From: Octopus bimaculoides
Taxonomy: Eukaryota
Direction of reading: 5' to 3'
DNA: 64,000 nucleotides
NCBI RefSeq assembly: GCF_001194135.2
Contig: NC_068983.1
Location: forward strand, 137,332,429 to 137,396,428
The notes under the pieces were generated by a model that worked only from the letters and a program-made list of their open reading frames with translations, did no database searches and was not told where the DNA came from. A program made the translations under genes and the position numbers. This document shows, one piece after another, positions 4,601-42,630 of the stretch (position 1 is its first letter; the number at the start of each line of letters is the position of its first letter).

Positions 4601-4841
4601 ATGCCGGCTAACTGTATAGTGAAAGGCTGTCGCTCCATTCAGAAGAAAGGCGGGCCGATTAGCTTCTACCGACTACCATGGAAAAATGTCCGTTTAAGAA
4701 ATGAGTGGATACGACGCGCTGGTTATGATCCGAATAATTACGATGAAGTGAAGCACATTAGTCGTGACCATCGAGTATGCAGCAGGCATTTTTGGAACAA
4801 CCGCAAGGAAAGTCCTTATGATCTACCGACGTTTTATTTGG
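4601..4841 (+). CDS. THAP zinc-finger module A, putative first coding exon (80 codons + 1 nt, phase-1 donor)
   Basis: ATG 4601: MPANCIVKGC...W...VCSRHF...LPTFYLG carries the THAP C2CH signature with conserved W, F and P. Donor G|GTAAAG at 4841/4842; the unspliced frame stops 6 codons later. About 90% aa identical to module B. Confidence 0.9.
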
Positions 4842-5044
4842 GTAAAGAAACTATCTATTAAAACTTGGTTTTCTTTCCTTTTTTTAATATAATTTTCACT
4901 CTTTACCCCTCTCGTTTCTCTTCTCTTTTCCTCTATCTATTTTGTGATAATGAAAACGACTAAGTAGCTTAACACACATACACACATACAAAAACGAATT
5001 TTGTGTATATGTCGTCGGCGTCCTGAAATTTCTACCTCAATTTC

Positions 5045-5077
5045 ATTGGTCGATGAAGCTAAGTTATCGTGACGTCA
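5045..5077. promoter_or_regulatory. Reverse CCAAT (ATTGG) + CRE palindrome downstream of THAP module A
   Basis: ATTGG 5045-5049 and TGACGTCA 5070-5077; the same pair occurs at 13755-13790 after module B. Confidence 0.45.
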
Positions 5078-6110
5078 CACGAGTTTGAGTGGGGATGAGT
5101 GCTTATACTTCCAGCGCTTGATCAAGCGTGGAAGTAAATGAGTTATGCTGTGTATGATCACTTTCATTTGTTTACAAATATAAAATATTAATAAGCTAGC
5201 ATTAGTAAACAGCGATTAGCCTCATACGATAATGCACACTCACACACATATATATGTATGCGTATGAGTTTAAAACATTGAGAAAGCACTCAGTACATAT
5301 ATATTTATCGGTATGAGTTGATGTTAAAGGTAACTGTTCCCAAATAACAATACTGATTTCAATGAGATGTGTTGTGTTCTAATGATAGCAATGTAAATTG
5401 ATCAATGGAACGTTTCAGTTAGTTTATACTTTAACCCTATAATACCGATGTCATGCTGGAGGCTCTAACGCCAATAGACTATCAACTAATTTATTGTTTA
5501 CCTTTTATATCGGTCTGGTAGAGATACAGAATAAACTGATGCATACCTCAGATATTTCCCCTCGTTTTTTCTTTTAAGCATCTATATATTCCTTTCTGTC
5601 AGAGAATTTTATATATAATAACTGTCCTGCATTAAGATTTTTAAAAGATTTAATTTCTTAAGATGAGGATAATAGTCCGAAAACTATAATCTTATTCATA
5701 TCTCAGCTTCGAATTTAGATATGTTAGCTATTATGTTTAATTTAAACTTCTAATATGTGCGATAGAATTTGATGCACCAGTATTTTTCATCATACATGAA
5801 GTTCAGAAGGAAATAGTTTAGGGATTGAAAAGGGAGCTAGTTTAGGGATCGAAAGAGTGACAAATCTAATAAAAATTCAGAAGAGTGACAAAACTGTTTG
5901 GGAAGGGTTCAAACATAAAACTTTTTCATTGGTAATTCACTTCATAATCCTGTAATATTAGGCATACAATTATTGACTTAACCGTAACCGTTAAAATAAA
6001 AGGATTAGAGTGTTTTTAGGAAAATAGTTCTGTTGAGTCTGGAGGATTTGGCCGTTTATTCAAATGTCAATAGCGAAGTTTTATTTTTTTTTATTATCGT
6101 TTTGTCTATA

Positions 6111-6341
6111 ATGGATGAATACAAATTTGCCAAATCCCAGAAAGGTAAGGACAAACTATCCTTTAGGGAGCACACCTACCGACACCAACGATCTCGGGAC
6201 TAGAATCATTACTTCAGGTGCGAGGACAACATCTTTAGTGGTTCTGTAACCCTTCGTGGAGTTCAACTTTTTAATGCACATGGTGGTTGGGTATCCGAGA
6301 GAAAAAAAAGCACATAGTCATGCACCGCTTCCAGAGAGAAA
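6111..6341 (+). pseudogene. Decayed FLYWCH-type zinc-finger module (MULE transposase-related)
   Basis: MDEYKFAKSQKGKDKLSFREHTYRHQRSRD*NHYFRCEDNIFSGSVTL, then HSHAP in the +1 frame after an A-run. Matches the FLYWCH pattern (F.KSQ.GK.KL...Y.Y....YWRC...C...H.H.P). In-frame TAG at 6201-6203, second Cys apparently replaced by Phe, frameshift near 6301-6310, GTAAGT donor at 6342. Confidence 0.65.
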
Positions 6342-7302
6342 GTAAGTAATACAAGCTCTTGATGAACTGAAAAGTAAGGATTGACACAAACATAAAAGCA
6401 AAAAGAAATTGCAATACCTTCCTCTTCGGGGGATGTAATATTAACTTAAAAACATGTAATGTCACTCTTTTGAAGGGATCCCATCCTAAACACGTAGTTG
6501 ATGCATTTTCCATCACGGATATTTTTTTCTTCGTGTCATTTCTTGTTCTTATCCCGATATATATATATATATATATATTATATTTGTATATGTCTTTCTT
6601 TCTGTCTCTAAACTAAAGGCATATCTTATCCATCGCTTGTTGATAAACATGTCCCAAATAAATATTATTTCCTCTTACATCACTAGAAATTAACTCACCA
6701 GATGTCCCCAAATTAAGAATTAAAGGCTTGTAATAACGAGAATAACATGAGATATTTAAAAGTTTATTCTGTTTGGTTTAACCTTTTTATCCTTAGAACT
6801 TTTCTCAGAACTAAGTTTTACGCACCTCATTTGAAATGAACACAACGTTGAATATTGAGTCAATTATTCCCAACTTTATACTTTATTGAGAAATCAACTC
6901 TTATTTTCTCACTGAATTAATACATTGCCTTCCAAAACTTATCATGCTGTTGCACGAACAATTCTTACATTTTCGGTAAATCAATTTCCTTACGAATTTT
7001 ACATTTGGTTGAAATAATTTTCGTTTTAATGATTGTGTACAAAAAAATATTTACCTACTTACTATTCTAAGGCAAAATTTAAATATTGGCCTCGAAAGTA
7101 CTTTCCATGTAAAGGAACGTTTTGTATCATTCCAGTTCGTTAAAAGAATCTATCAAGTTATAATTGCAAGTTCAGCTACATTAAGGGGAGAAAAAGTGAA
7201 CTGAAATCGGGAGTTATCGTCCATTCATTCAATATCATAAGGTGGCGCTGCAAACTGTTTGGATAGCTGTGTAAGCAACAAAGGCAGACTTTAGTGTTTA
7301 TC

Positions 7303-7546
7303 ATGGGTCGAGCACGAAAATCATTCTCTGCTAAACAGAAGTTGAAAGTGATAGCCTATGCCGAAATACATGGGAACCGAGCTGCTGGTCGACAATTCAC
7401 TGTCGATGAGAAATCGGTCAGAGAATGGCGAAAGCAGAAAGATAAGCTCGAGAAACTGCCGAAAGTAAATACAGCTGATGATAACATGCAAGCAAAAGAA
7501 TGGCTGTGTGCTATGCAGAAATGCTGTTTATACATACCGAAATACG
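7303..7546 (+). CDS. Brinker-type HTH DNA-binding module A (pogo transposase N-terminus-like), putative first coding exon
   Basis: ATG 7303: MGRARKSFSAKQKLKVIAYAEIHGNRAAGRQFTVDEKSVREWRKQKDKL, the typical R.SY...FKL.V...A...GNR.AAR.F.V....VR.WRK pattern. The 3' boundary is uncertain: AAA|GTAAAT at 7464/7465 (phase 0) or ACG|GTACTT at 7546/7547 (phase 1); ORF stop at 7602. Confidence 0.75.
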
Positions 7547-9283: not shown

Positions 9284-9510
9284 TTAACCCTGTTGCATTT
9301 AAACTGGCCATATCTGGCCAAATAATTTACCTGCTTTACCTTCAAATTAGCCAGACCTGTCCTCACACACATGGCCTACAATGTTATTCTAATCATAAAT
9401 AATCATGTCATTAAAATCTCAAAGCTCTATGGCAATGCACGATTAATTCATATCAATATGAATAGATAAGCATTATATTTGTCAGAGAAATCTGAATGCT
9501 AAAGGGTTAA
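9284..9510. mobile_element. TTAA-flanked (piggyBac-like) MITE
   Basis: TTAACCCTGTTGCATT...AATGCTAAAGGGTTAA ends; an inverted relative is at 20573-20804. Confidence 0.65.
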
Positions 9511-9889
9511 CGTTTTCCCCATTGCATTAATGATATTAATGAAACGGTTCTTATTGACACAGTCTTCTTAGTGCATCTTAACTCTGACATATCTATATTT
9601 GTTCAAAACTACATACTTACTAAGTGCATATTTAATTATATAAGTAGAAGTTTGTTTCTTCTTTTTATACAAATGAATTGTTTTTCCTATATTTATACCT
9701 TTCTTATATAGAATGTAAATTGTGTCTCTAAATCTATTTTAGATATTATTTCATTTCATCATATTTCATTATTTTCAACTTCTGAATGAATCAAAACTAA
9801 CCTGAACAAAATTGTCATCTAATTGATCTATATAAAATCATCTATTGCAATAGAAGATTATTATTTATATAAGAGTAGAATATGATACC

Positions 9890-12218: not shown

Positions 12219-12680
12219 CGTTTGCGCCTCTGCTAGTCGGGTCTCTTCATACGTATATCTGAAACTCCCCTCACCCGCCAATTCCTCTTTGTGGAGTTGG
12301 CCTCAAGCACCAGACCATGCAGAGCCCCCAAATCCCATTTCCGAAACCAGCTTAAAACCACTCTCCTCCGCTGCTCCATTGACCCAAATACCTGGGAGAC
12401 AATCGCCAAGGACCGCCCAAAGTGGCAGCGTGTCATCGTCAAGGGATCGAACCAGATGGAAAATAACAGGTATCAAGAGGCAGAGATCAGACGTCGAAGA
12501 CGCAAACAGTGACTCGCACTACCTACCCACCGCCGGCCAATCCTCTGCGATAATTGCCCCCAGCTCTTCTATACCTGAACAGCCACCTCAGGCATCGGCA
12601 CCCTTCGCGTCCATCAGGATAAAGAGTCCTAATCACTCGCTACAGATTAACTACTCGGATATGATTTAATGCCAATGACG
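12219..12680 (+). mobile_element. RTE-type LINE 3' fragment
   Basis: RQFLFVELASSTRPCRAPKSHFRNQLKTTLLRCSIDPNTWETIAKDRPKW matches the RTE RT C-terminus (RLPKQLLYGEL...GRP..RFKD.LK...ID...WE..A.DR..W), followed by a decayed Cys-His tail. GC-rich against background. Confidence 0.8.
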
Positions 12681-13146: not shown

Positions 13147-13170
13147 CCAATCAGAAGCAGGTAGATTGGT
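13147..13170 (+). promoter_or_regulatory. CCAAT-box-containing element upstream of THAP module B
   Basis: Paralogous to 4419-4445; about 150 nt upstream of the ATG. Confidence 0.5.
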
Positions 13171-13295: not shown

Positions 13296-13536
13296 ATGCC
13301 AACCAAATGTATAGTGAAAGGCTGTCGGTCCCTTCAGAAGAAAGGCGGACCGATTAGTTTCTACCGACTACCATGGAAAAATATCCATTTAAGAAATGAG
13401 TGGATGCGACGAGCTGGCTATGACCCAAATAATTACGAAGAAGTAAAGCATATAAGTCGTGACCATCGGGTGTGCAGCAGGCATTTCTGGAACAACCGTA
13501 AGGAAAGTCCTTATGATCTCCCAACGATTTACCTTG
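13296..13536 (+). CDS. THAP zinc-finger module B, putative first coding exon (phase-1 donor), paralog of module A
   Basis: ATG 13296, in-frame TAA at 13266 upstream. MPTKCIVKGC...VCSRHF...LPTIYLG. Donor G|GTAAAG at 13536/13537, exactly 240 nt after the ATG as in module A. Confidence 0.9.
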
Positions 13537-15627: not shown

Positions 15628-15669
<42 letters not shown>

Positions 15670-16197: not shown

Positions 16198-16378
16198 ATG
16201 GGTTTTAAACGAATGAAATATACTTCAAAATTTAAACTACAAGTCGTGATGCTGGCTCTGAAAACCAATAATTCTGAAGCCGGGAGACAATTTAGTGTTA
16301 ATGAAAAACTTGTTCGGGACTGGAGAAAAAAGGAAGCTGAACTCCGGAATATGCCACCGACAAAATGTTCTAATCGCG
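16198..16378 (+). CDS. Brinker-type HTH DNA-binding module B, putative first coding exon (phase-1 donor)
   Basis: MGFKRMKYTSKFKLQVVMLALKTNNSEAGRQFSVNEKLVRDWRKKEAELRNMPPTKCSNR. Donor CG|GTAAGA at 16378/16379, and a second strong phase-1 donor CAG|GTGAGT at 16429/16430. Confidence 0.85.
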
Positions 16379-17963
16379 GTAAGAAAAGTACTGACAAAAT
16401 CGATATGCCATGTGTTCATTTTTTTACAGGTGAGTTTACACTTCCGAATTAATAATGATAATTTCTAACATTGCTGAAGAAAATGTGTTGAGAATATAAT
16501 CGATTGGTTCGGCAATAAACGAGTAGTTGCAGCATAGATGGGTTTTTTTGTTTTAAGTATTGGATTTTTGGATGAATTTTGATTTATGAAAAGCAAAATA
16601 AAATCCAACAATTATTGTTGATATAAAATCAACTGTTTGTTTATACAATCGTGTACTGTTCTTAGGTAGTTATTGTGTTGTGAAATGAATAAACAGGATG
16701 GCGACGTAATTGCAACAAATCCTTGACCGCTTTACTTTCGTTTTATCTGTTCGAAATTAATGAAAATCATCCTCACCTCAACCTCGACTTGTGTATAAAG
16801 GTCGTCACAGTTGCGTAACTGTTCTGTTAGAATTGCGAAGGATCCTAGTTGTTTTTACAACCTCTTTAAAGCTCTGCTTATGTAGGTTTAAGATATTTCT
16901 TCTCAGTAGAGCATGAGGATATGAAAATTGTTTGCTTTTGGATGATGATAGCATGAATCAGGTTGAAAATACAGATAGCATATATTTATTGTTGATAATT
17001 TTTTTTCTAAAATATGACATTCTAGAGAAAGAAATGTTTTTTATCTGATTTAAAGTGTAATGATGTTTTGCTTAATGCCCACCTATCTGCGTTTTTCTTA
17101 TGTCAGTGCTTGGAAAATGTTAGCTGAATTTTACCTTCCAGCATTTTAAGATCGTTGGAATCATTATGTATGATCTTATTCGATGCTTAGAATTTTTTTT
17201 AATGGTTTGCTCTACACGTATTTGTTATGAGGTGTATTCATAATTAATAAAAGTTAATTTTCTTCGTTGTAAAGGAAATGACCCTGAGAAATTTAAAAAT
17301 CGATCCGTAATCAAAGATCGTATGGAAGTGTATTTCGTTATCTTGTATTTTGACTGCGAGAAATGAAAAACTATGCCAACAAATGGACTGATGCTCTCAA
17401 GTGAACACATAATTAATGTGGTGTTCGTGGTTTTGATGATTGACAAAAATTGCTTTTTCTATCTATAATGTGAACTTCTTTTTTTTTATTAGTCTCCCTG
17501 AAAGCCCATAAAAAAAAAAAAAGAATCTCACCAAAATGTTTTCTGCAGCAATTTTTGAAGCAATTTATAAAGTTTATAAACTCGAGCAGGTCCATTCAAT
17601 GAATATGTTACGCTGGTTCATTGATAGTTGTCGATTCCAGTGGTTAAAATACAAGATAATTCATTAATCGATTACACTTCCGTTTTGGAATTTTCTTATA
17701 AGAAAGCAAGCAAACCAATCTGAATTAAATAGCTATGGAATTTGAAGAACACACCCAAACGAATGGAAGATAAACCAACCAATAAAGAATGAAATGATGG
17801 AATGAAAGAAAAACAAAAACGAAAGGAAGAGTAAAATCCTAAGGATCAGCAGCAGCAGTGAACTAAGCCGACCAACCCACCGACCAACTGAGTGAGGGGC
17901 CGACATGCTTGGATGTATATATGTGGGCAGCCATATTGCTTTGAATGAAAACACTGTAGAAAG

Positions 17964-18034
17964 ATGGTGAACTTCTGTGCTGTGTTTGGTTGTAGCAGTA
18001 AACACAAGACTGGAAGCGGCATTTCCTTCCACAG
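17964..18034 (+). CDS. THAP zinc-finger module C, exon 1
   Basis: MVNFCAVFGCSSKHKTGSGISFH(R), a classic THAP N-terminus. Donor CAG|GTAAGA in phase 2, matching the acceptor at 22845. Too short for the supplied ORF track. Confidence 0.85.
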
Positions 18035-22844: not shown

Positions 22845-23116
22845 ATTTCCTGATGTGCGTAAAAAGCCAGGTCTGTGGAAAAAATGGGTCCGTGCTCTTG
22901 CCCGTCAGAACTGGACTCCTAGCCATTACACCTACATATGCAGTCAACATTTTGAAAAATCTTGCTTCCAAATGATCAAGCCAGGGGGGCGGGCTTTACT
23001 TCAGAGATATGCCATTCCTACAATATTCAACAATGTACCCAAGGCACCTCAAAGTCATGATATTAAACATGAAAATCCATTGCTGCTTGCAACTAATTCT
23101 TATGAGAGAAACTCTT
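22845..23116 (+). CDS. THAP zinc-finger module C, exon 2 (ends in phase-1 donor)
   Basis: Long pyrimidine tract + TAG| at 22844/22845. AG|A restores Arg, then FPDVRKKPGLWKKWVRALARQNWTPSHYTYICSQHFEKSCF...LQRYAIPTIF (THAP W, CxxHF and AIPTIF box). Donor CTT|GTGAGT at 23116/23117. Confidence 0.88.
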
Positions 23117-28050: not shown

Positions 28051-29967
28051 CAATAGCAAGTCTGTAAAGGATCACTAACATGTTATATCCTGTGATAATA
28101 CCTTTCTCAAGATTGTATCACTCTGGGGTTGTAGGAGGCATCATGTCAGAGTAAAATTATCATGTGATATGGGAATTTTCTATATTAAAGCAAGCATTAC
28201 CCATTTTGGAGGGGGTTTTCCAAAGAACTCACTGCTGAGAAACCAGATTACATGTTCTACATGAATAGAGTACGTGACTTTGCCCTGTAGCTTGTGAGAT
28301 CCTGTCAAACTGTCCAACCCATGCTAGTATGGAAAGTAGACATTAAATATGATGATGATGACAACAACAACAACAACAATCTAATAACTTTGTTGCCTCA
28401 TTCTCAGTACCACCAACATGCTAGGTCACAAAGAATCTAAGGGATCTATGGGTCAAGAACAACATAGTTCTACCCTTTCATCTTATGACACTAGAGAGGA
28501 GTTTAAACTTGAGAAACCATGGTGGATAATAAAAAGGAAGAAGAAAAAATGAGCCTGAACTAAGAGGGTGTAGGAGGTTAGTAATTCCTCTAGAAATGCC
28601 TATCTAGCTGAAGTGGCTGTGTTTCATGGTTGTTCAAATTAGTGGTGAGATTGGTCAAAATACAGAGTGAGCCAAAGGAGAACAAAGAGAATAATGTGTT
28701 AATTGTGGAGGAGATTATATATATAAGTTTATATCAAAGTACAAAAATGTAAGCTAGTCTCCATACAGCTAATAATCTATTCTCCACAGGACATTGGAAA
28801 ATTCACTGTTCTCCCAATTTGAAAGTACTGATGGGCAGGGATTTCAAAGGCCTATTTTAGCAGATGATTATTGAAGCCCATGAGCTGCCCTGATTTTGGC
28901 CGTGCAATGGTTTATCATCTTTGTAGTTGAGTGGCCCTCATTTGTATTATGTAACTAAGTTTTGAACTCATTTTAGTAAATTTAATTAGTTTCTGCCATA
29001 CCACCCCATTTATCAAATTATTCACATTGTTTTGATGCATTCAAATCTTTTGTTCTTTCTAGTTTAAAAATTATTACTTATTAGTAGGTTATTTTTCAGC
29101 TAAGGAAACCTCTTCCTCTTTATACCACATACAAAAGTTAAATGTAACAAGATCTTAACTACATGCTCATTTATTGTAGCATACGCATGTGTGTGTGTGT
29201 ATAATAATTGATTAAGTAAACAACAGATGGAATTGGTATAACAACCGTTTTGACCCATCCTGCGACTGTCCTTTATGGATGGGATGCTGTGCATCATATT
29301 ATGTTGCATCAATCTTGCAATCTGAGTCACATCAGGTACATTCATACATAAATGGTGTCTCGCTAAAGATCTTGAGTTTTGGCATGTGTGTGTCCGTTGT
29401 ATAGGCTTAGTGGTGCAAACAGAAAAATAGAACTCAAAATATAAGTGTATATATATAGATGTGCGTGTGTGTTTTAATTATCAGCAAAAGTTAGAGTATA
29501 TCAAGGGCCGATGCACAAAGCTTGCAGCTTTTGAGTCACTGTAACCTCTGCCAATTATTAATAATAAAATATATATATATATGGTGAAAAATCTTTGCGA
29601 TTTGATCTTTTGCATTTTGCTTCCATCTACCAGTTTTCTATTATTTTCGGTACATTATTTTCTACCCTATAAATGAGGGAATTGATGGCGTTTTTTTTTT
29701 TCTTTGTGCAAGAAATCAATTTTTTCCTTTGTATGGCTTATGTCGTCCTTATTAGTTATCTCCCTTCTATTTGCCACTTTTACATGTTACTTTTTAAGGC
29801 ATATGACAAATGTAGCCAATCAGAATCCTTTAAAATATCACATGGTTTGTCATGATAGACAAAATGGACTGCTGAATAGCATACATTTCTTTTTCTTATA
29901 ATTTAAAAGAAAATTGAATTGCCTTTGTTCTATCTTTCATTTTTGCTGCACAAAATCAAAAGAATTG

Positions 29968-30322
29968 ATGATGGAAAGACATATTGGAACACAAACCACA
30001 GTTTATGATATTGTAACCCAGTGTCAATGCCCTCAAATATTTTGTTCTTATAAAGATATTGAAGATCATGTGAAGTACACATTATTTACTAACTTTCATA
30101 ACTTGGCTAGTTGGAACTTGCAAAATTTATATTTGTCTAATTTAATGAAGAAGAAAGCTTGCAAAGGACAGTGTTTGCATAAGAGAAAAGATCCTAACTT
30201 TTCACGTCGAACTTGTACATGGGAATATTTTTTAAATATTGATGGGAGGTTAATTAGAGTTTGTTCAAAGGCTTTCCGATTTGTTCACGGCATTAGTGAC
30301 AAACGAGTTAGAAAAGCTCAAG
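29968..30322 (+). CDS. Cys-rich transposase-N-terminus-like module of uncertain family (phase-1 donor)
   Basis: 118 open codons: CQCPQIFC...LFTNFHNLASWNLQNLYLSNL...SRRTCTWEYFLNIDGRLIRVCSKAFRFVHGISDKRVRKAQ. Resembles the CxC..C / Q..YL / R..T..Y.L / RVCK.FF...GIS motif set I recall from uncharacterised invertebrate transposase-like proteins. Strong donor AAG|GTAAGA at 30322/30323. Confidence 0.7.
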
Positions 30323-31339: not shown

Positions 31340-32010
31340 AACCTAATGGGGGTGGGTGGCAATGAAATAGACCTCTAGGAATTTAACGCCAGACTGGAAA
31401 AAGCAGTTGGAGCATATGGAATGGAAGCTTGTCCAGAAAAGAGTAAAATACTAGTCAAGAGACACAACTACAATACAGCAACCAACATACTGTGTAAAGC
31501 AAAACTTGAAACAGTAGACAGCTTTTACTTTGGATTCATTTTAAGAACAGCAGCTCAGTAAAGGAGATAAAAAAAAAAGTACAACTTGGTATATTCTCTT
31601 CTACCATGAAGTCAAACATTGTCAGAAGTGTAGTTACATCAAAGCTCAAACTGTAGGAATTCTCTTTGACTTAGAAATTTTTATACGGGTGTGAAAGCTG
31701 AACAGTTACAGCTTAACACAGAATTTAGAATCCAGGCACTTGAGTATGATTGCTTCGAGGGCTGTTATTTGTCCCCTATGCAAAGCACAAAACCAACAGC
31801 TTTGTTAGCAACTTACCAGATACGCTGGCAGGTGAGAGCCATGCCCTACCATAATGAAACAACAAAAGCTCATCTGATATGGACATGTATCCTACTATGA
31901 TTCCCTATCCAAAACTATTCTCCAGGACATAGTTATGGGGTAGGGCCAAGAAAAGAGCAAGCAAAGAAATCCTGTTCTGCAGCCCTTCCATATATGAATG
32001 GAGACAATAG
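31340..32010 (+). mobile_element. Degraded RTE-type LINE reverse transcriptase fragment
   Basis: LEKAVGAYGMEACPEKSKILV and KTILQDIVMG remnants resemble YGMEISAEKSKIM and KTILQG of RTE elements. Confidence 0.65.
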
Positions 32011-32087: not shown

Positions 32088-32091
32088 ACAT

Positions 32092-32233: not shown

Positions 32234-32605
32234 NNNNNNNNNNNNNNNNNNNNNNNNNNNNNNNNNNNNNNNNNNNNNNNNNNNNNNNNNNNNNNNNNNN
32301 NNNNNNNNNNNNNNNNNNNNNNNNNNNNNNNNNNNNNNNNNNNNNNNNNNNNNNNNNNNNNNNNNNNNNNNNNNNNNNNNNNNNNNNNNNNNNNNNNNNN
32401 NNNNNNNNNNNNNNNNNNNNNNNNNNNNNNNNNNNNNNNNNNNNNNNNNNNNNNNNNNNNNNNNNNNNNNNNNNNNNNNNNNNNNNNNNNNNNNNNNNNN
32501 NNNNNNNNNNNNNNNNNNNNNNNNNNNNNNNNNNNNNNNNNNNNNNNNNNNNNNNNNNNNNNNNNNNNNNNNNNNNNNNNNNNNNNNNNNNNNNNNNNNN
32601 NNNNN
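32234..32605. other. Assembly gap (N run); other gaps at 1918-1957, 37259-37462 and 41512-41538
   Basis: Runs of n. Confidence 0.98.
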
Positions 32606-32641
<36 letters not shown>

Positions 32642-34219: not shown

Positions 34220-34595
34220 AATTATTCATATATTAAGTTTTTTTGCTGTGATATTACATTTTTTAGTTATGGTGTAAATTATTGTAATATGCACGCACCA
34301 AAGGGGGTGAAAAGCTGTGAAGGTTCTGTAATTCCACCATTCAATTTAACAAAATTGCCAACACTCAATTTCCACATAACACATTTCCTTCTTTTAAAAC
34401 CTATTTTATTTTCTTCACCATTTCCACTCATTAACTTCCATAAAACATTTTCGAAGTTCTCTTAAATGTATGAAGCTACAATAATTCGTTTTGTATAGTT
34501 GAGTGCTACTCGAGGCCATTTACAAGGATGTTGTATAGTGTAGTAAAAAGTGAGTAGTGTAAGACTTTATCTTGAAGCTGTTTGGTCAAAAGCAA

Positions 34596-35028
34596 ATGCC
34601 ATCTAGTAAATCGAAATCTCATATGGTTGTTATACGTGCTGTAGATGAAGGTACCAAAAAAAAAAAAAAAACGAAAAAGTATTTCGGTATCCCACCAATG
34701 ACATAAAAAATTATGAAAGATCGCGCTCGTACTTTGTCTGACTATGCCTCATAGCAACGCTAGCGAGATCATCATCATCGTTTAACGTCGTCCTTTCATG
34801 TTGGCATGGGTTGGACGGTTAGAGGTGCAATTTATAAAGATGTCGGAAAGACCATTTAGAAATGGGTCCTACAGCTTCGCCGTCAGGGAGTACAACTAAA
34901 TTCTACTGAAATCAAAAATTAAACTGTACAAGTAACGCAGTCTTGGTTGTAGTAGATTTTGCGTTTGAATAATTGATATGAGCTCTTTCTGGCTAGATAC
35001 AGGCAACAGTTTTCATGGGCTTGACAAC
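34596..35028 (+). pseudogene. Decayed paralog of the Psq/CENP-B HTH module at 42189
   Basis: Aligns by eye with 42189-42630 (e.g. AAATGGGTCCTACAGCTTCG.CGTCAGGGAGTACAA). Contains deletions, stops, an expanded A-run and a ~55-bp SINE-tail insertion (~34768-34822). Flanks are also homologous (34331 vs 41809; 35160 vs 42776). A GTGAGA donor remnant remains at 35029. Confidence 0.85.
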
Positions 35029-36558
35029 GTGAGATAAACAAAAAGTGTGATGGTAGTGGTAGCAGACGTAGAGTATATGAAAGAGAAATACTCTCATAGA
35101 AAGAGTCGAGTAACATCAACGTTGAAGTGAAAGAGGGGAAAAAAAAAACAATATGAAAACACACCTGAGTTGGACTTCGAGTTTGATGTCATGTAGTGTA
35201 CAAGCAATGTGTTTAAGAGGCTGGCTGCTAGATATATAACGTAGTAATCTAGAAAATCAGTCTATGGTCACGTTTTGTATCTTCATCGTTTCTTAAAAAT
35301 CACAGCTGTCTTTCCGTTCCTAACCATATTATTTACTTTCTGCACTCAAATTCCTTGTTCTTTCTGTTATATTTCGGTATTGTATAAACAGTAATGTATG
35401 GTATGTTTCTAATAAAATCAAAAATGAGTGACAAACCAGTGTTATCACTTTGTATGTATATGTCACTTCAAGAAACGATTGTTATATATAAACAGAAAGG
35501 GATGGGATACTTTTATTCAATATTTGGAAAGATGAATGTTCTTTATTTACTCGTACACAAGCTGTTAAACTGATAGTTGCAATTTAATTTAGAAAAACTG
35601 TTAAAATAATAGTGAACGTTTACACGCTTACTAAATCTGGAGAGACCGTATGTGCTCAATATAAGAAAGGTTGTGGATTATATGATAATTTTAGTTTGAA
35701 ATTTATTGATTTTCTTTTAACTCGCTGTCATTCTGAAACTGGTGAAAAGTGTTATTAAATTTTGGTTGTGTTTGTAAGTGAAGCTAATGGCTTGAGTTTG
35801 TTTCCTAGTTGGATCACCTCCAGCTAAGTTAATTCTCTTTTACCTTAACTTGACTAGCACTTTTTTTTTAACCGCAAGCTTAACTCATTAGTGCCCATGG
35901 TCTTTTAAGTTCACAAGAATTGATTATTAATTTACCAACAATTTTAGAGGTATATCTAAAATCAGTTGATTTTTAAAATGGCACTCTTGATAACTAATAC
36001 CGAAGCATTGCCATTAATCATAAGGCTAAAGTGTCTTCTAAAAACTACACACATTTCAATGAATATTGGCAACGCCCTGAAATTTTTTCGTTCTTATAAA
36101 GATAGAGAGTGAAAATTTGGGATGAAGCAAATAATTTGAGCATTAAGGGGTTAAGTAAAAGTTATTTATGACTATCAGAATTTAAAAGAGTGGATAATCT
36201 ATTGGCCTAATCAAATCTCGTCTTTTGTTCACTCTATATGTGTAACATTGAATCTTTGGATTGCGTATTTAATAATTATCAATCTAATCTGAGTGTTAAT
36301 TATCGAATGATTCTATGTAGTGAGAGATTTGGCGATCTTACGATACTAGTCACACGGCTGTCTCTTATAAACCACGTGTGTTTATTTACATTTGTGAAGA
36401 TGATCGTCCGTTTCCGTAAAAAAATTTTTTTAATGTTTACATATGGGGTTGTGGAGAAAGGGGATCTTTTGAAGTCGGCGTGAAAGCGAAAGAGACAGAG
36501 AGAGCGCGATTGTATGAGGGAAGTTCTTTTGAAGTTGGCGTGAATCGGAAAAATTATG

Positions 36559-36681
36559 GGTAATTTTTTAGATTAACACCCGAACGATCTTCACTAGGCT
36601 GTTAGGGTTTGGGTTAGGGAATTCGTCCCTAACTCTAACCCCCTAGTGAAGATTGTGCGGGTGTTAATCTAAAAAATTACC
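36559..36681. repeat. Near-perfect 123-bp palindrome with telomere-like GGGTTAGGG arms
   Basis: GGTAATTTTTTAGATTAACACCCG..CGATCTTCACTAGG...GGGTTAGGGA ATTCG TCCCTAAC...CCTAGTGAAGATT.TGCGGGTGTTAATCTAAAAAATTACC. Confidence 0.85.
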
Positions 36682-37117
36682 AAATTATGTGCGTGTGTGT
36701 GTCTGTTTGATGGGGTGTGCGAGACAAAGTGTGGTGTGCATGTGAAGTGCTTTTGTTATTGTGTGTGTATGTGAGAGAGAGATAACTGAAATTTTTTTAT
36801 TCACTTTTTGTAGTGAGTGATTGACAGAGAAAAAGTGAGAGGTTATGTATGAATGGCTTCAGTGACACGCACGCAGGTTGTTATATATATATGTATATGT
36901 ATATATATATAATTATATGTATTTCTTCTATCTTAATGAATAAAAATTCTTCGGATAGAATAAATGGGTTAATAGAAACCAATGTAGCAAAGAACACAAA
37001 ATAACTGTGGTGTAGTTCCTGTTTTTAAAGCAGGAACCCCTTGAAATTTTGGGTATTTGAGTATATTTAAAAATTTAAGGAATGGAGAAAACGCATGTTA
37101 TAATTGCATACTTTATT

Positions 37118-37258
37118 CCTACATATGTTTCAAAGGATTGCAACCTATGTGATCCATAGGGATTGATTCCCATGCATTCCCTGAAGAGAAGGTTACAATT
37201 TTAATATCATAGATCCCTATGGATCACACAGGTTGTAATCCTTTGAAACATATGTAGG
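37118..37258. repeat. Inverted repeat, 46-bp arms and ~49-bp spacer, abutting an assembly gap
   Basis: CCTACATATGTTTCAAAGGATTGCAACCTATGTGATCCATAGGGAT versus its reverse complement at 37213-37258, 2 mismatches. Confidence 0.85.
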
Positions 37259-38899
37259 NNNNNNNNNNNNNNNNNNNNNNNNNNNNNNNNNNNNNNNNNN
37301 NNNNNNNNNNNNNNNNNNNNNNNNNNNNNNNNNNNNNNNNNNNNNNNNNNNNNNNNNNNNNNNNNNNNNNNNNNNNNNNNNNNNNNNNNNNNNNNNNNNN
37401 NNNNNNNNNNNNNNNNNNNNNNNNNNNNNNNNNNNNNNNNNNNNNNNNNNNNNNNNNNNNNNGATGGTACAATGAAATAAAGTATTGAATGTCTTATTGA
37501 ATAGATGAAATATTGAGTTCAATATAAAGGATTAAATATATAAAGGCGAATACGTATTTTCTATACCTTGTGGTATTTCATCATGGCCGGTATGACAGAC
37601 TTTAACAGACTGTAATAGATTGGCTGGTTTTCTGTCTTTTATACCAATTCCTTTGGACAGCAGCAGTATGTGTTTGGCTATTTTTAGAATTGATGCCAAA
37701 TTTATTTTTAGAAATGATGACATTTGAGAAATTGTTTTGTGTTTTGGTTGTAGGGATAAGATTTTTAAACCCCAGTAGGTGTTTGGCTGTTCTAAGAAAT
37801 GATGACATTTGAGAAATTGTTTTGTTTTGGTTGTAGGGATATATAGATCGATGTATGGCCAAGAGGGAGAGAGAGTTGACTGAAATTTTTTTATTCACTT
37901 TTTGTAGTGAGTGACTGACAGAGAAAAGGAGAGAGAAGTTATGTATGTATGGCTTCAGTGACACACACACACAGAGACGGCGCGCCAACTTCAAAAGAAC
38001 TTCCTCGATCCAATCGCGATCTCTCTGTCTCTCGCTTTTACGCCGACTTGAAAAGATACCCTCCCCACCCCACATATTTTTAAAAAATTTTAAACTCTAC
38101 GGAAAGCGACGATGTTATTCACAAACATAAACAAAAACACGTGCACCATAGTTTGACAGCTACGGTACTCATACCGTAATTTAGCCAACTGTAAACTTAA
38201 CTTGACTAGTGTTTGTGGGTTCTTCTATAGATCAAAGTATTCACATAAATATGTAGTCATTTTAATTTTTAACCATAGCTTAAAACTACTTTCATTTTGG
38301 TGATCTAGTAGTGATGATATTTGTGATGTCTTTTACTTCTATTCATAAATTATCTTGACGTGTTGTTTTCTTTGTTGTTTCGTATTTCATCTAAATAAAA
38401 CTTGGTAGTAATAATAATTTCCAATTTAGGAATAATGGAAGCTTACAATTTCTGCTTTATGCTGTTTACACAATGAAATATAAGTTTTATAAGTTCATTA
38501 TTTTCTGTTCTATTAAGGATGAGAATTGATGATTTGGATGTATTGCCTGTCAAATAATTTGGTCTGGATAGCTTTTGCCTTTATATTTGTCCTTATCTTG
38601 CTTATGATAGAGAAACAAAATCCAATGTTTATCATATTGTTCCTCAGCATCACTGAACCTAGACTGTTTGTTAGTGTGTGTAAAAATATTGAAGATAATA
38701 TGATCTTCAATGAACATAACCCTAACTTTCAGAATCTGATCAGTAAGGAGTTGTAAAATTTGTGTTTAATGAAAAAGAAAATTTACAAATGACATTGTAT
38801 ACATAAGAGATAAAAGATACTAATTTTTCACGTCAAACTTGTATTTGGGAAAATTTTGCCAAGTACGGGAGGTGGGGGTGAAAGGTTTTTTTTTTTTAA

Positions 38900-40250: not shown

Positions 40251-40914
40251 ATGTGTTATTTATTGTAACACTTGGCTTTTATCATTTTGGGCTATGAATT
40301 GGTGGAACTGAAATAATAGCAGGTTTAATGCCTTGTAGTATTTGTTCCAGCTGTTTGTGTTTGTTGTTCAAATCTTGTTATGGCCTACTTGGATGCCTTT
40401 AGCAGCATGCACTGTGTTGCAAGCATTTGAGTCTTATATCTGGTTTGAGGATGCCTTCTCTCCATCTAATCTTGGAGGGCCTCTGAAGAATTATGGGTAC
40501 CGTCTGTCTTCCTTTTTAAAAAATATAAAAGAAGACAGACAGAAGCTTGTAATGTAAAAATAAATGAATGAAAGATCTCGTATAAAAAGGAAGTACTAGA
40601 ATCGGCTTAAAGTAAAATTGAATTATAGTAAATTTATCTCTTAGCTGACTTATGAAAGTCTTTGGGACGGTGGTAAGTGTAAGTGTCACAAAAGTTTTAT
40701 AATTATTTGTCCTTTGAAGCGCGTGGAGTTAGAAAGAAATGTGAAATAGTATCGTAGCACAGGGGAGGTAATTTGAAGCATTGACTTGGAACAATTCATG
40801 AATATATTTCGTAGTTCAATTAACATATTCAGTATGAAAGGTCACATTATGATTTTGTGTCTTCGTTTTGTTATATTTCATTATATAATGTGTTCGTCCT
40901 TCATTACTGCTTGA

Positions 40915-41060
40915 AAACCGGTGTTGGTTTCTTTACTTCCATAACGTAGCAATTCGACAAAATGAAGCGATAGAATAAGAACTGGGGTCGATTTGTGCGG
41001 CTGAACCCGTTGAAGCTGTGCCACAGCATGGCCGCAGTTTAATGACTGAAGACAAAATTG
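40915..41060 (-). mobile_element. SINE fragment (same family as 44720-45056, opposite orientation)
   Basis: Reverse complement of the CAGTCATT..ACTGCGGC.ATGCTG...ATCGACCCCAG block. Confidence 0.65.
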
Positions 41061-42188
41061 ATGTATTGTAAAAAAAAATTTGTTTATTGTTCAACCCTAA
41101 TTCGTCTTTAAAAACGAGTAGATTTAATTTAAAGGCAAGTAGGGCGTAAACCACTCTCATCCTATTTGTGAGAGACTGTAGTGTATATGTGAGTTGACAT
41201 TTGGCTGCTATTTGTAATAAGGTTAAACTATGGTTCTTTTATGGGGTAATAATAACTGTAATATCCATAGGTATTAAATAAAGCGTTTGTGTGAAACCAG
41301 AATTTCATAACAAATTCAAACATGTATCTTGTTAGATGCAAGAAAAGAACCAAGAAAAAAAAAGCTCCTTGCTGGATCTGTACTTCGATATCATATACTG
41401 GTCCTCAGTTTTTGCTCTGTTGTAAAGTTTCTTAAGAGGTTATAATCTAATTTAAGGAATCAGATGCTACCCCCAGTGTGTTGTGTGTAACTCTCTCTTT
41501 CTCTCTAGATCNNNNNNNNNNNNNNNNNNNNNNNNNNNTATATATATATGTCTATATTCACACATATACATATATTTTAATTAATTCTATTATAACATTT
41601 TATCAATCTTAAGATTCCTTTCTGAAGAAATCGAGGTTTTGTTTGATTTATGGTCATAAATCTTTCTATTAATCAATGTCCCCCACCTCCTTTGAAATTG
41701 TTTAAACTTTTTTTTTCGAGACATCGTGTAAGACTAACGTAACACACATCCATTCACAATCAGTAATGAGGAAAATCATTAAAATTTAAAATAATCGTAA
41801 ATCCTACATTCCACCGTTCAATTTAACAAAATTCGAGCACTTTAAATACTATCATAACTTCACTTTATCCTTACTCCACCTCCGGTATTTCTGTTATTTA
41901 TTATTGTTATTATTAAATGAAAACTTTAGTAATTTAGTTCATTGAGTCAGGTTTATTTAACTAAAATCTATGCAGCTGCAATACATTGGTTTGTTTAGAC
42001 GATTACTACTAGAGAGCTCAAGTGCTGCTAGAGGCCACATAGTGCAGTAAATCTTTCAGTAGTAATTCTCTAACTCTAAGGCCAATCATTGCAGGCAGTG
42101 AACGAAGTGAGTGTGACTTCATTCTAAATATAACGTAGTAAAAGTGAGTAGAGTGAGAAGCGATAAGTAGACTGCAGCTTTAAAAAAA

Positions 42189-42630
42189 ATGACTTCTGCT
42201 ATCAATAAATCGAAGCCTTATGGTTGCAAACGCAAAGGTTTGCTACTCAAGACAAAAGTGGCTATAATACGTGCCGTAGACGAAGGCACAAAAAAGAAAA
42301 AAATTATCGCCCGCGAATTCGGTATCCCAGCGACAACATTATCAACTATTATGAAAAACCGCGCGCGTATTTTGGAAGATTTCACAGACAATGGCTCGTC
42401 GCAACGCAAGCGAATTAGAAGTACAATTTATAGAGATGTCGAACAGGCCATATACAAATGGGTCCTACAGCTTCGTCGTCAGGGAGTACAATTAAATGCC
42501 ACCAAAATCAAGCGTAAAGCTGTTGAAGTAGCACACAGTCTTGGTTACAATGAATTTTGCTTCCGTAATAATTGGTATGAACGCTTCCAAGCTAGATACG
42601 GATTCAATTTTCAGACGCCGAACCAAAAAG
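42189..42630 (+). CDS. Psq-type HTH + CENP-B-type HTH module (Tigger/pogo transposase DNA-binding region), putative first coding exon (phase-1 donor)
   Basis: KRKGLLLKTKVAIIRAVDEGTKKKKIIAREFGIPATTLSTIMKNR (HTH 1), RKRIR...YRDVEQAIYKWVLQLRRQG...IKRKAVEVA...F...NNWYERFQARYG (CENP-B HTH). No DDE domain follows. Donor AAG|GTGAGT at 42630/42631; stop 5 codons later if unspliced. Confidence 0.92.

What the first reader, a model, noticed from the sequence alone, without database searches (positions are those of the whole stretch)
4601..42630. Array of captured transposase DNA-binding domains as phase-matched variable first exons (protocadherin-like architecture)
Seen: nine co-oriented + strand modules (THAP x3, Brinker-HTH x2, Psq/CENP-B HTH x2, FLYWCH, one Cys-rich unknown). 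Each intact one starts at an ATG at the domain's natural N-terminus, lacks a catalytic domain and any TIRs I can find, and runs into a stop shortly after a splice donor. Donors at 4841, 13536, 16378 (and 16429), 23116, 30322 and 42630 are all phase 1. Counting THAP-A/B once, five independent phase matches would be about (1/3)^5 by chance, though I picked the donors by eye. Established: THAP (P-element), CENP-B/Psq and Brinker-type HTH (pogo/Tigger) and FLYWCH (MULE) are transposase-related DNA-binding folds; clustered protocadherins and UGT1A use variable first exons spliced to constant exons; Drosophila mod(mdg4) and lola swap C-terminal DNA-binding exons. Inference: one locus producing a family of transcription factors with interchangeable N-terminal DNA-binding heads from unrelated transposon superfamilies on a shared tail. 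I know of no description of this in cephalopods, but cannot check the literature.
Basis: partly seen in the sequence, partly recalled or inferred. Interest (0 to 1): 0.93.

Follow-up and report, generated by a model that had tools for sequence, protein, structure and literature searches.

The report
Octopus BTB gene with swappable DNA-binding heads
This stretch of Octopus bimaculoides DNA is the middle of one very large gene in which many alternative first exons, each encoding a different transposon-type DNA-binding domain, are spliced onto the same BTB-domain tail; the gene models are public, but I found no paper that describes the arrangement.

Summary
The window is Octopus bimaculoides and lies inside RefSeq gene LOC106877732, which spans about 195 kb and has at least 36 predicted isoforms.

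**Modules.** All nine are real and lie on the + strand.
- Six are live heads used by RefSeq isoforms: THAP-A, Brk1, THAP-B, Brk2, THAP-C and CENP-B/Tc5.
- One, the Cys-rich head, is intact but unannotated.
- Two, FLYWCH and a second CENP-B/Psq copy, are dead copies.

**Splicing.** Joining window 4601-4841, 7303-7546 or 42189-42630 to a 50-nt exon at 47442-47491 plus the shared tail reproduces isoforms X20, X19 and X10 residue for residue. Both Brk2 donors (16378, 16429) give X27 and X22. Every donor is phase 1.

**Conservation.** In Argonauta hians the heads keep the same order. Only the heads and one promoter-like flank are conserved, with dN/dS of 0.02-0.09, and the two THAP donors I checked sit at the same position and phase.

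**Promoters.** Four of seven live heads have a CCAAT box 107-182 nt upstream of the ATG. This hints at one promoter per head but does not prove it.

**Prior work.** I found no paper describing the architecture. One paper's supplement lists isoforms of this gene as separate transcription factors. I could not inspect RNA evidence directly.

The parts
4406..4600 (+). Conserved upstream flank of the THAP-A head, likely its promoter and 5' UTR. Contains a CCAAT box at 4419-4428 (CCAATGAGAA).
   Evidence: This is the only sizeable non-coding block conserved with Argonauta: 85.5% identity over 4406-4850. The motif GACCAATSAGAAGC is kept in both species and upstream of THAP-B.
4601..4841 (+). Head exon THAP-A (80 codons + 1 nt, donor tgg|GTAAAG, phase 1). 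First coding exon of RefSeq isoform X20.
   Evidence: Pfam THAP E=5e-11. Splicing to 47442 reproduces XP_014782209 exactly. dN/dS is 0.017 against Argonauta, and the donor is conserved.
6111..6314 (+). Dead FLYWCH head (pseudo-exon). In-frame TAG at 6201 and lost zinc ligands.
   Evidence: Translation. Pfam FLYWCH E=2.7e-5, matching only profile positions 1-35 of 62.
7303..7546 (+). Head exon Brk1 (Brinker/CENP-B-type HTH, donor acg|GTACTT, phase 1). First coding exon of isoform X19.
   Evidence: Pfam BrkDBD E=4e-8. Exact reconstruction of XP_014782208. dN/dS of 0.094 over the first 50 codons.
13147..13156 (+). CCAAT box (CCAATCAGAA) 149 nt upstream of the THAP-B ATG.
13296..13536 (+). Head exon THAP-B (donor ttg|GTAAAG, phase 1). 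First coding exon of isoform X21. It is an old duplicate of THAP-A.
   Evidence: Pfam THAP E=8e-11. 100% match to the head of XP_014782210. Similarity to THAP-A (88%) is confined to 266 nt. dN/dS is 0.086 against Argonauta.
16198..16429 (+). Head exon Brk2 with two alternative phase-1 donors: 16378 (gcg|GTAAGA, isoform X27) and 16429 (cag|GTGAGT, isoform X22).
   Evidence: Pfam BrkDBD E=2e-11. Both predicted products are present as XP_014782217 and XP_014782211 by exact look-up.
17964..18034 (+). THAP-C exon 1 (ATG plus the first 23.7 codons, donor cag|GTAAGA).
   Evidence: tblastn gives 100% to isoform X11. Canonical GT..AG pairing. dN/dS of 0.035.
22845..23116 (+). THAP-C exon 2 (acceptor tttag|A, donor ctt|GTGAGT, phase 1). 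With exon 1 it forms the head of isoform X11.
   Evidence: Pfam THAP E=1.5e-9, profile positions 25-87. Exact reconstruction of XP_014782200. 80% aa identity to the Argonauta protein P0001, which has the same junction.
29816..29825 (+). CCAAT box (CCAATCAGAA) 152 nt upstream of the ATG of the Cys-rich head.
29968..30322 (+). Cys-rich head (118 codons + 1 nt, donor aag|GTAAGA, phase 1). The ORF is intact, but neither simple ATG-to-donor product I tested matches a RefSeq isoform. Its domain type is uncharacterised.
   Evidence: HMMER against 1.84 billion representatives gave 20 hits, best E=3e-11. Named homologues are uncharacterised arthropod proteins with no informative Pfam match. It aligns over its full length with that family and ends just after the conserved HGIS.KR.R helix. 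The predicted products are not in the protein collection.
34563..35050 (+). Dead duplicate of the CENP-B/Tc5 head, with at least 7 stops.
   Evidence: tblastn gives 48% identity to the head of X10. Translation. There is an 81% DNA repeat with 42415-42535.
42082..42088 (+). CCAAT box (CCAATCA) 107 nt upstream of the CENP-B head ATG.
42189..42630 (+). Head exon CENP-B_N + Tc5 HTH (147 codons + 1 nt, donor aag|GTGAGT, phase 1). First coding exon of isoform X10.
   Evidence: Pfam E=5e-13 and 2e-12. Exact reconstruction of XP_014782199. The O. vulgaris protein CAI9720177 has the same head at 99.3% identity.
47442..47491 (+). First shared exon (50 nt). Acceptor tttctgtttcag|GT, enters in phase 1 and leaves in phase 0, donor aca|GTAAGT. 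Encodes x-DTQNVQISKQTHRFST.
   Evidence: Sequence. 100% identity to all isoforms that use window heads. 72% identity to the Argonauta tail.

Best explanation
The window is the second of four blocks of alternative 5' exons ('heads') of a single gene of about 195 kb, Octopus bimaculoides LOC106877732.

Each live head is a short exon, or for THAP-C an exon pair. It starts with its own ATG and encodes a complete DNA-binding domain of a transposase type: THAP, Brinker/CENP-B-type HTH, or CENP-B_N+Tc5 HTH, plus one uncharacterised Cys-rich domain. It ends at a phase-1 donor.

Shown, at the level of gene models and conservation: every head in the window joins the same acceptor at 47442. The transcript then continues into exons beyond the window that encode a relic half-THAP motif (HFVGGNGPTRDHPDPLP), a linker, a BTB/POZ domain and a long Ser/Thr-rich tail.

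Inferred: transcription starts at a promoter just upstream of the chosen head. Downstream heads lack usable acceptors and are removed as part of one long intron, as in clustered protocadherin or UGT1A genes. The locus would then yield a family of nuclear proteins with identical BTB oligomerisation tails but different DNA-binding specificity. These could pair through BTB into homo- and hetero-oligomers that read combinations of sites.

Likely history: heads arose by repeated capture of transposase N-terminal exons and by local duplication (THAP-A/B; CENP-B and its dead copy), on an ancestral THAP-BTB gene. Unused copies decay in place, as with the dead FLYWCH and CENP-B/Psq copies.
For: 1. Exact reconstruction. 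Window 4601-4841, 7303-7546 and 42189-42630, each plus 'GT' and the shared tail, equal RefSeq X20, X19 and X10. THAP-C 17964-18034 + 22845-23116 equals X11. The Brk2 products through donors 16378 and 16429 exist as X27 and X22. The THAP-B head is 100% identical to that of X21.

2. Scale. The gene has isoforms numbered up to X36. The 26 I read carry 24 distinct heads that join one of four successive shared exons. The tail has Pfam BTB. The gene range is 195 kb.

3. Selection. In the Argonauta hians locus L001 the order THAP, Brk1, THAP, Brk2, THAP-C exon 1 is the same. Apart from interspersed repeats, blastn finds only the heads and one upstream flank conserved. dN/dS is 0.017, 0.086, 0.035 and 0.094 at dS of 0.5-1.3, and the THAP-A and THAP-B donors sit at the same position and phase. 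The Argonauta protein P0001 has the same THAP-C-to-tail junction.

4. Wider family. A 1788-nt transcript contig (L003/P0041) and a cuttlefish protein (P0022) join a Brk-type head to a homologous BTB tail. Neighbouring octopus paralogues have THAP, FLYWCH, CENP-B or FAR1-type heads.

5. Promoter hint. The exact motif CCAATSAGAA occurs 4 times against 0.57 expected. Three of those lie 149-182 nt upstream of head ATGs. Four of 7 live heads have a + strand CCAAT[CG]A 50-250 nt upstream, with a null probability of 5e-5. The motif is conserved in Argonauta. Each ATG has an in-frame stop 7-106 nt upstream.

6. Transposon ancestry. The domain types point to it. The Brk heads are 54-61% identical to pogo-like proteins that carry DDE_1. 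No DDE remnant or TIR remains.
Against: - The isoforms are computational RefSeq models. I could not see the RNA-seq or cDNA support, and no transcript contig with exactly these products was on record.
- The O. vulgaris and Argonauta annotations carry names copied from RefSeq, so they may not be independent.
- The Argonauta annotation treats its THAP-A orthologue as a 68-aa stand-alone gene. It also fuses Brk1, a FLYWCH and Brk2 into one 'hypothetical protein', so pipelines disagree.
- The Cys-rich head is unannotated.
- Three of the 7 live heads (Brk1, Brk2, THAP-C) have no CCAAT box in the tested range. The motif and the range were chosen after looking.
- DNA binding and BTB oligomerisation are inferred from domain families, not tested.
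Confidence: 0.85

Rival explanations
1. The heads do join the shared tail, but not through one promoter per head. Either transcription starts at one or a few upstream leader exons and the heads are mutually exclusive internal exons, or the heads are joined by trans-splicing, as reported for Drosophila mod(mdg4) and lola.
For: RefSeq isoforms X35 and X36 start in short leader exons with no DNA-binding head, so upstream start sites exist. Brk1, Brk2 and THAP-C show no CCAAT box 50-250 nt upstream. I could not see 5' UTRs or start sites.
Against: All heads are co-oriented and lie upstream of the shared exons, so cis-splicing is enough. Each head has its own ATG with an in-frame stop 7-106 nt upstream, and I saw no strong acceptor just before any ATG. 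A conserved CCAAT-containing flank sits upstream of THAP-A and THAP-B in two species.
Confidence: 0.2
2. The heads work mainly as stand-alone mini-genes. Unspliced transcripts would end at the stop a few codons past the donor and give DNA-binding-domain-only proteins. The joins to the BTB tail would be minor products or annotation artefacts.
For: Every head ORF closes 5-22 codons after the donor. The Argonauta annotation calls a 68-aa THAP-only gene at the THAP-A orthologue. Contigs that encode unspliced read-through products of other heads of this gene exist (P0068, P0077, P0080).
Against: All eight donors share phase 1 with the single acceptor at 47442. In Argonauta the THAP-A and THAP-B donors keep position and phase, and similarity stops about 10 nt past them. 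RefSeq has seven isoforms with these joins. The read-through contigs are up to 11 kb long and are most simply genomic.
Confidence: 0.07
3. The modules are decayed transposon fragments lying by chance in one orientation inside a long intron of a BTB gene, and the multi-isoform models are over-prediction.
For: The region does hold real transposon debris: a LINE 3' tail at 12237-12509, two dead heads, and MITE-like inverted repeats.
Against: dN/dS is 0.02-0.09 at dS of 0.5-1.3. Order, ATGs and the two THAP donors are kept in Argonauta while the surrounding unique sequence no longer aligns. There are no DDE remnants or TIRs. All live heads share the same phase.
Confidence: 0.02

Closest known systems
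Drosophila lola and mod(mdg4): BTB transcription or insulator factors with about 20-30 isoforms
   Same: One locus, one shared BTB region, and many alternative exons that each supply a different DNA-binding module. In mod(mdg4) these are FLYWCH, a fold also found among this gene's heads. BTB-mediated oligomerisation allows mixed complexes.
   Different: The polarity is reversed. In the fly genes the BTB is N-terminal and constant, and the variable zinc fingers are 3' exons, partly joined by trans-splicing. Here the variable part is the 5' end and the BTB lies downstream. The fly variable exons are paralogues of one fold, whereas here at least six unrelated folds are used. TTK-type BTB is reported as arthropod-specific and was not found in molluscs (PMC11426971).
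Clustered protocadherins and UGT1A (variable first exons spliced to constant exons)
   Same: A tandem, co-oriented array of alternative first coding exons, each with its own ATG. All share one splice phase and join the first constant exon, and dead copies sit within the array. There is possibly a promoter element per exon (a CCAAT box here, the CSE in Pcdh).
   Different: Pcdh and UGT1A variable exons are paralogues made by duplication and encode extracellular or catalytic parts. Here most heads are unrelated to one another and encode DNA-binding domains of transposon type. The array is also tiered, with four blocks that each join a different successive shared exon. Promoter choice has not been shown.
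Host-transposase fusion genes formed by alternative splicing (e.g. KRAB-transposase fusions in tetrapods, Cosby et al. 2021; from my own knowledge, not read here)
   Same: A transposase DNA-binding domain is joined by splicing to a host regulatory domain, with loss of the catalytic domain.
   Different: Those are single capture events, each giving one fusion gene. Here one host gene has accumulated two dozen or more captured heads, used as alternatives.
Drosophila Pipsqueak, Bric-a-brac and Ribbon (BTB plus Psq HTH proteins)
   Same: A BTB domain combined with a pogo-derived Psq/CENP-B-type HTH.
   Different: These have a fixed architecture with an N-terminal BTB, and no array of alternative DNA-binding exons.
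[quoted passage not shown]
   Same: It reports that Octopus THAP and CENPB proteins carry BTB/POZ. Its supplement lists LOC106877732 four times; the entries shown are CENPB-BTB, BTB-THAP-PSQ and HTH-PSQ-BTB.
   Different: It treats the entries as separate members of expanded TF families and calls BTB itself transposon-derived. The words 'isoform' and 'alternative' do not occur in the main text. The single-locus variable-exon architecture is not described.

Membership tests
Variable-first-exon gene cluster (Pcdh/UGT1A type) | Tandem, co-oriented alternative 5' coding exons upstream of shared exons | tested here: met
   Seven live and two dead heads lie on the + strand at 4601-42630, and the shared exon is at 47442-47491.
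Variable-first-exon gene cluster (Pcdh/UGT1A type) | Each variable exon splices directly to the same first constant exon in one phase | tested here: met
   RefSeq X10, X11, X19, X20, X22 and X27 were rebuilt or looked up exactly from window coordinates, and the X21 head matches at 100%. All donors are phase 1. This is met at the level of predicted models and conservation, not of reads.
Variable-first-exon gene cluster (Pcdh/UGT1A type) | A separate promoter in front of each variable exon | tested here: inconclusive
   A CCAAT box lies 107-182 nt upstream of 4 of 7 heads (P=5e-5, post hoc) and is conserved in Argonauta. No start-site data were available.
Variable-first-exon gene cluster (Pcdh/UGT1A type) | Variable exons are paralogues of one another | tested here: not met
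   THAP, BrkDBD, CENP-B_N/Tc5, FLYWCH and the Cys-rich domain are unrelated Pfam families. Only THAP-A/B and CENP-B with its dead copy are duplicates.
Variable-first-exon gene cluster (Pcdh/UGT1A type) | Mutually exclusive or stochastic use per cell | not testable with these tools
   This needs single-cell or long-read RNA data.
lola / mod(mdg4)-type BTB isoform locus | A shared BTB domain with alternative DNA-binding exons | tested here: met
   Pfam PF00651 is present in all isoforms, with different DNA-binding Pfam families in the heads.
lola / mod(mdg4)-type BTB isoform locus | BTB at the constant N-terminus, with variable C-terminal exons | tested here: not met
   The heads are N-terminal and the BTB lies about 330 residues downstream of the junction.
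lola / mod(mdg4)-type BTB isoform locus | TTK-type BTB and trans-splicing | not tested
   PMC11426971 reports no TTK motif in Mollusca. Trans-splicing cannot be assessed from DNA.
Domesticated transposase DNA-binding domain (host-transposase fusion) | The domain is homologous to the N-terminal DNA-binding domain of a transposase family | tested here: met
   Pfam assigns THAP, BrkDBD, CENP-B_N, HTH_Tnp_Tc5 and FLYWCH. The Brk heads are 54-61% identical to proteins with DDE_1. This is not established for the Cys-rich head.
Domesticated transposase DNA-binding domain (host-transposase fusion) | Catalytic domain and terminal repeats lost, and coding sequence under purifying selection | tested here: met
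   There is no DDE or other Pfam hit in the remaining + strand ORFs and no flanking inverted repeats. dN/dS is 0.02-0.09.
THAP zinc finger | C2CH signature (C-x2-4-C-x35-53-C-x2-H) at the protein N-terminus, followed by a P-containing C-terminal motif | tested here: met
   THAP-A reads MPANC-IVKG-C...VC-SR-H-F...DLPTFYL, read directly. Pfam scores are above the gathering threshold.

The most novel reading that the evidence does not exclude
Octopods, and probably all coleoid cephalopods, may have built a 'transcription-factor exon array'. Promoter choice among two dozen or more captured transposase DNA-binding heads would put different reading heads on one BTB oligomerisation scaffold. Cells expressing different subsets would then assemble different hetero-oligomers, giving a combinatorial regulatory or chromatin-architecture code. 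This would be convergent with Drosophila lola/mod(mdg4) in logic and with protocadherin clusters in gene structure. The array would keep growing by transposon capture, and paralogous arrays lie next door.
Probability: 0.15. Interest if true: 0.95.

Novelty: new variant of a known kind. Interest (0 to 1): 0.8.

Why it matters
If the gene models are right, this is one of the most extreme known cases of transposase DNA-binding domains being recruited into a host gene. It is not one capture but a standing array of at least 24 alternative heads. They come from THAP/P-element, pogo/Tc5, MULE-type FLYWCH, Crypton-like DUF3504 and Tc1-like families, all on a single BTB scaffold, and they are conserved between Octopus and Argonauta.

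It would show that the 'one BTB, many DNA-binding exons' solution known from insects evolved independently, in mirror-image form, in cephalopods.

It offers a natural system for asking how new transcription-factor specificities are born, tested and discarded, since live, duplicated and dead heads sit side by side.

It also corrects the literature. Counts of lineage-specific 'expansions' of THAP, CENPB and Psq transcription-factor genes in Octopus include isoforms of this one locus.

Tried and rejected
1. A concatenated query of all heads found few hits. Isoforms are hidden inside 90%-identity clusters. Searching with the tail and listing cluster members solved this.

2. The mini-exon LKTQNQINEEYDV and the next shared exon HFVGG... 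are not in the window. No head of the other three blocks is either. They lie outside the window, or conceivably in a gap.

3. Direct transcript evidence was not obtainable. Exact-product look-ups for X20, X10, X11 and the O. vulgaris CENP-B isoform found nothing on record. The gene ranges of the O. bimaculoides and Argonauta genes exceed 100 kb, so no DNA was returned. I could therefore not test conservation of the Cys-rich or CENP-B heads, or of exon 47442, at the DNA level.

4. The Cys-rich head remains unidentified.
   - Pfam gave nothing relevant.
   - Its homologues have no informative Pfam domain.
   - The AlphaFold model is moderate (pLDDT 74).
   - Foldseek against PDB gave no match (best E=1.9).

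5. A Pfam scan of all other + strand ORFs of at least 45 aa up to 42.4 kb gave nothing. This scan misses fragments shorter than 45 aa or broken by frameshifts.

6. The sigma-70 promoter scanner does not apply to a eukaryote and I ignored it.

7. Literature searches for the locus IDs, and for combinations of BTB, THAP, FLYWCH, octopus, alternative first exons and lola/mdg4, found no description of the architecture.

Full report
**What the window is.** GC content is about 33%. Protein matches are at 100% identity to Octopus bimaculoides RefSeq products. The window therefore lies inside gene LOC106877732. In assembly GCA_001194135.2 this gene spans about 195 kb and is followed about 10 kb downstream by a paralogue encoding CENP-B_N + Tc5 HTH + BTB.

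**Checking the observation.**
- Pfam confirms three THAP modules (4601, 13296, 22845), two Brinker-type HTH modules (7303, 16198), a CENP-B_N + HTH_Tnp_Tc5 module (42189), and a FLYWCH remnant (6111-6314).
- A second CENP-B/Psq copy at 34563-35050 is 48% identical to the live one but has at least seven stops.
- The FLYWCH copy has an in-frame stop and has lost ligand residues.
- The Cys-rich module is an intact ORF.
- All modules are on the + strand.
- No inverted repeats bracket any module.
- No other Pfam domain, catalytic or otherwise, is detectable in the remaining + strand ORFs.
- The four assembly gaps all fall between modules. None lies between 42189 and 47491, so they do not affect any conclusion about frames.

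**Finding the tail.** A search with the concatenated heads returned an Argonauta hians protein (P0001). It begins with the THAP-C sequence and continues into a BTB-domain protein. Mapping it back to the window gave two results:
- THAP-C has a separate first exon at 17964-18034.
- The next coding segment is a 50-nt exon at 47442-47491, with acceptor tttctgtttcag|GT entering in phase 1 and donor aca|GTAAGT leaving in phase 0.

**The isoform set.** Searching with the tail returned O. bimaculoides LOC106877732 and its O. sinensis/vulgaris orthologue LOC115209932. Listing cluster members revealed isoforms numbered up to X36. I read 26 of them. They carry 24 different N-termini that join one of four successive shared segments:

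| Block | Heads join | Isoforms | Head types |
|---|---|---|---|
| 1 | mini-exon LKTQNQINEEYDV | X4-X7, X9, X35, X36 | THAP+Psq, THAP, CENP-B, FLYWCH, leader only |
| 2 | exon xDTQNVQISKQTHRFST | X10, X11, X19-X22, X27 | the window's heads |
| 3 | HFVGGNGPTRDHP... | X1, X2, X13, X16, X29, X30, X32 | DUF3504/QRICH1-like, THAP, Psq |
| 4 | AGPSNQV... | X3, X14, X15, X18, X28 | DUF3504, CENP-B, zinc-finger-like, paired-like HTH, THAP |

Only block 2 and its shared exon are in the window.

**The decisive test available to me.** I spliced window coordinates in silico.
- 4601-4841, 7303-7546 and 42189-42630, each followed by the GT of 47442-47443 and the common tail, give proteins identical to X20, X19 and X10.
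- 17964-18034 + 22845-23116 gives X11.
- The two products predicted from the Brk2 donors 16378 and 16429 are both present in the protein collection, as X27 and X22.
- The THAP-B head equals that of X21.
- The products predicted for the Cys-rich head, from ATG 30145 or 29968, are not in the collection. That head is therefore unannotated.

**Independent evolutionary evidence.** The Argonauta locus L001 (39.8 kb) carries, in the same order, a THAP-A orthologue, Brk1, a second THAP, Brk2 and THAP-C exon 1.
- Between the two species, blastn aligns only these exons, about 195 nt upstream of THAP-A, and copies of interspersed repeats.
- Nei-Gojobori dN/dS is 0.017 (THAP-A), 0.086 (THAP-B), 0.035 (THAP-C exon 1) and 0.094 (Brk1), at dS of 0.5-1.3.
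- The THAP-A and THAP-B donors are at the same codon position in Argonauta, and similarity ends about 10 nt beyond them.
- The heads are therefore functional coding exons that end at those donors, not decaying transposon copies.

**Beyond octopods.** A cuttlefish protein (P0022) and a 1788-nt transcript contig (P0041/L003) join a Brk-type head to a homologous BTB tail. This is transcript-level evidence that the head-BTB architecture is real in the wider family.

**Mechanism.** That the heads join a common acceptor is shown at model level. That each head has its own promoter is inferred.
- Each ATG is preceded by an in-frame stop 7-106 nt upstream.
- The exact motif CCAATSAGAA occurs four times in the window against 0.57 expected. 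Three copies are on the + strand 149-182 nt upstream of the ATGs of THAP-A, THAP-B and the Cys-rich head.
- A CCAATCA lies 107 nt upstream of the CENP-B head.
- Four of seven live heads have such a box 50-250 nt upstream, against a null probability of 5e-5 for random ATGs. The motif and range were chosen after inspection, and THAP-A/B are duplicates.
- The box and its flank (GACCAATSAGAAGCnGGTAGA) are conserved in Argonauta upstream of both THAP heads.
- The CCAAT box is the classical NF-Y promoter element (my own knowledge). Its position fits a start site about 60-100 nt further on.

**Origin.**
- Transposon ancestry follows from the domain families.
- For the Brk heads it also follows from 54-61% identity to proteins that still combine BrkDBD, Tc5 HTH and DDE_1.
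- THAP-A/B and the CENP-B pair are local duplications limited to the exon.
- The shared segment HFVGGNGPTRDHPDPLP resembles the C-terminal part of the THAP head of X4/X7 (SQHFVTFNGPSKDHPLPSIFP).
- Heads X29, X30 and X32 end in '...VCSK' directly before this 'HF'. A THAP domain (Pfam E=2e-7) is completed across the junction.
- The likely ancestor was therefore a THAP-BTB gene with an intron inside the THAP domain. This last step is inference.

**The Cys-rich head.**
- It aligns over its full 118 residues with the N-terminal region of a family whose named members are uncharacterised arthropod proteins, such as Penaeus LOC119576110.
- Its donor cuts just after the conserved HGIS.KR.R helix.
- Neither Pfam nor Foldseek identifies the fold.
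- An intact ORF, a phase-1 consensus donor and an upstream CCAATCAGAA make it a plausible live but unannotated head.

**Prior knowledge.**
- No paper in the searchable library contains the locus IDs or describes the architecture.
- PMC10027918 noted that Octopus THAP and CENPB proteins carry BTB. Its supplement lists LOC106877732 four times under different TF families. Its main text never mentions isoforms or alternative exons.
- The original UniProt models either split the heads (A0A0L8GD14) or chain six of them into one 1402-aa chimera (A0A0L8GDU7 = P0067).

**Verdict.** The object is a new variant of known kinds: a variable-first-exon locus by structure, and a lola/mod(mdg4)-like BTB isoform factory by logic, with reversed polarity and heads from unrelated transposon families. 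Remaining uncertainty concerns RNA-level support, promoter usage, and function.

Noticed in passing
window 54873-55826 (+): An unannotated 318-codon ORF lies in the intron after the shared exon, on the same strand as the gene. It contains repeated 'SLDRDLEKW' motifs and has no Pfam match. Its only database hit is a 96%-identical protein on a 3.8-kb contig from SRR11869391. That contig is colinear with the window at 88.8% nt identity, while the ORF region is 95-96% identical and gap-free. dN/dS is 0.14 (25 synonymous, 14 non-synonymous differences). The ORF starts right after ...ctgtaactttAG| in phase 0, the phase in which exon 47442-47491 ends, and it ends at TCG|GTATGA. It could be a phase 0-0 cassette exon, an alternative terminal exon, or a nested gene.
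   Followed up: partly
outside the window (shared exon 2 of the gene; proteins P0054, P0055, P0058, P0065): The shared segment HFVGGNGPTRDHPDPLP looks like the C-terminal half of a THAP domain. Heads X29, X30 and X32 supply only the N-terminal half ('...VCSK|HF...'), so the zinc-binding C2CH motif is split across the splice junction.
   Followed up: partly
window 4406-4600 and L001:74-271: This 195-nt non-coding block upstream of THAP-A is about 85% identical between O. bimaculoides and Argonauta. It begins at a CCAAT box and contains a TATA-like run about 55 nt further on. It is a candidate core promoter and 5' UTR.
   Followed up: partly
L001:29540-29725 (Argonauta Brk2 orthologue): In Argonauta the Brk2 head has Ile (KIGFRR...) where O. 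bimaculoides has the start Met (MGFKR...). The ORF continues upstream towards an intact-looking FLYWCH segment that the Argonauta annotation fuses to it. The start of this head may therefore differ between species.
   Followed up: no
window 4601-4841 vs 13296-13536 vs L001:272 and L001:22630: Both O. bimaculoides THAP-A and THAP-B are closer to the first Argonauta THAP (85-86% nt) than to the second (77-79%), although position suggests THAP-B is orthologous to the second. Gene conversion, or duplication plus loss, in one lineage could explain this.
   Followed up: no
window 12237-12509 (+) and 31379-31897 (+): These are LINE-like fragments. The first has the typical reverse-transcriptase C-terminal tail '...DPNTWETIAKDRPKWQRVI...'. 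A similar tail is embedded in the Argonauta chimeric model P0002. No Pfam hit reached E<=1e-3.
   Followed up: no
window 43982-44558 (+): Two adjacent ORFs ('...NMSIKLHCLHSHLDKFLENLGNPSEH...') lie between the last head and the shared exon. From memory they resemble the C-terminal region of a widespread uncharacterised transposon-associated protein. Pfam gave no hit.
   Followed up: partly
window 36491-38032, 36559-36681, 37118-37258: These are MITE-like structures with inverted repeats of 46-55 nt at 89-96% complementarity. One lies next to the assembly gap at 37259-37462. (TA)n and (CA)n microsatellites flank the gaps at 32234 and 41512 and probably caused them.
   Followed up: no
window 211-377; also 34768-34823 and 44893-45003: A short interspersed repeat of about 165 nt has at least 12 copies, on both strands, at 69-90% identity in the 40-kb Argonauta locus. 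It appears to be an old SINE-like family shared by both octopods.
   Followed up: no
outside the window: genes LOC106877737, -38, -41, -43, -44, -45 and the gene about 10 kb downstream of LOC106877732: These O. bimaculoides genes have near-consecutive locus numbers and lie on the same 168-Mb chromosome record, so they look like a cluster of paralogous BTB genes, though adjacency is confirmed only for the one 10 kb downstream. Their tails are 42-57% identical to the query tail. Their own transposon-type heads include THAP (nearly identical to the X4 head), FLYWCH, CENP-B and ZSWIM3_N/FAR1. Several have multiple isoforms, so the whole architecture seems to have been duplicated.
   Followed up: partly
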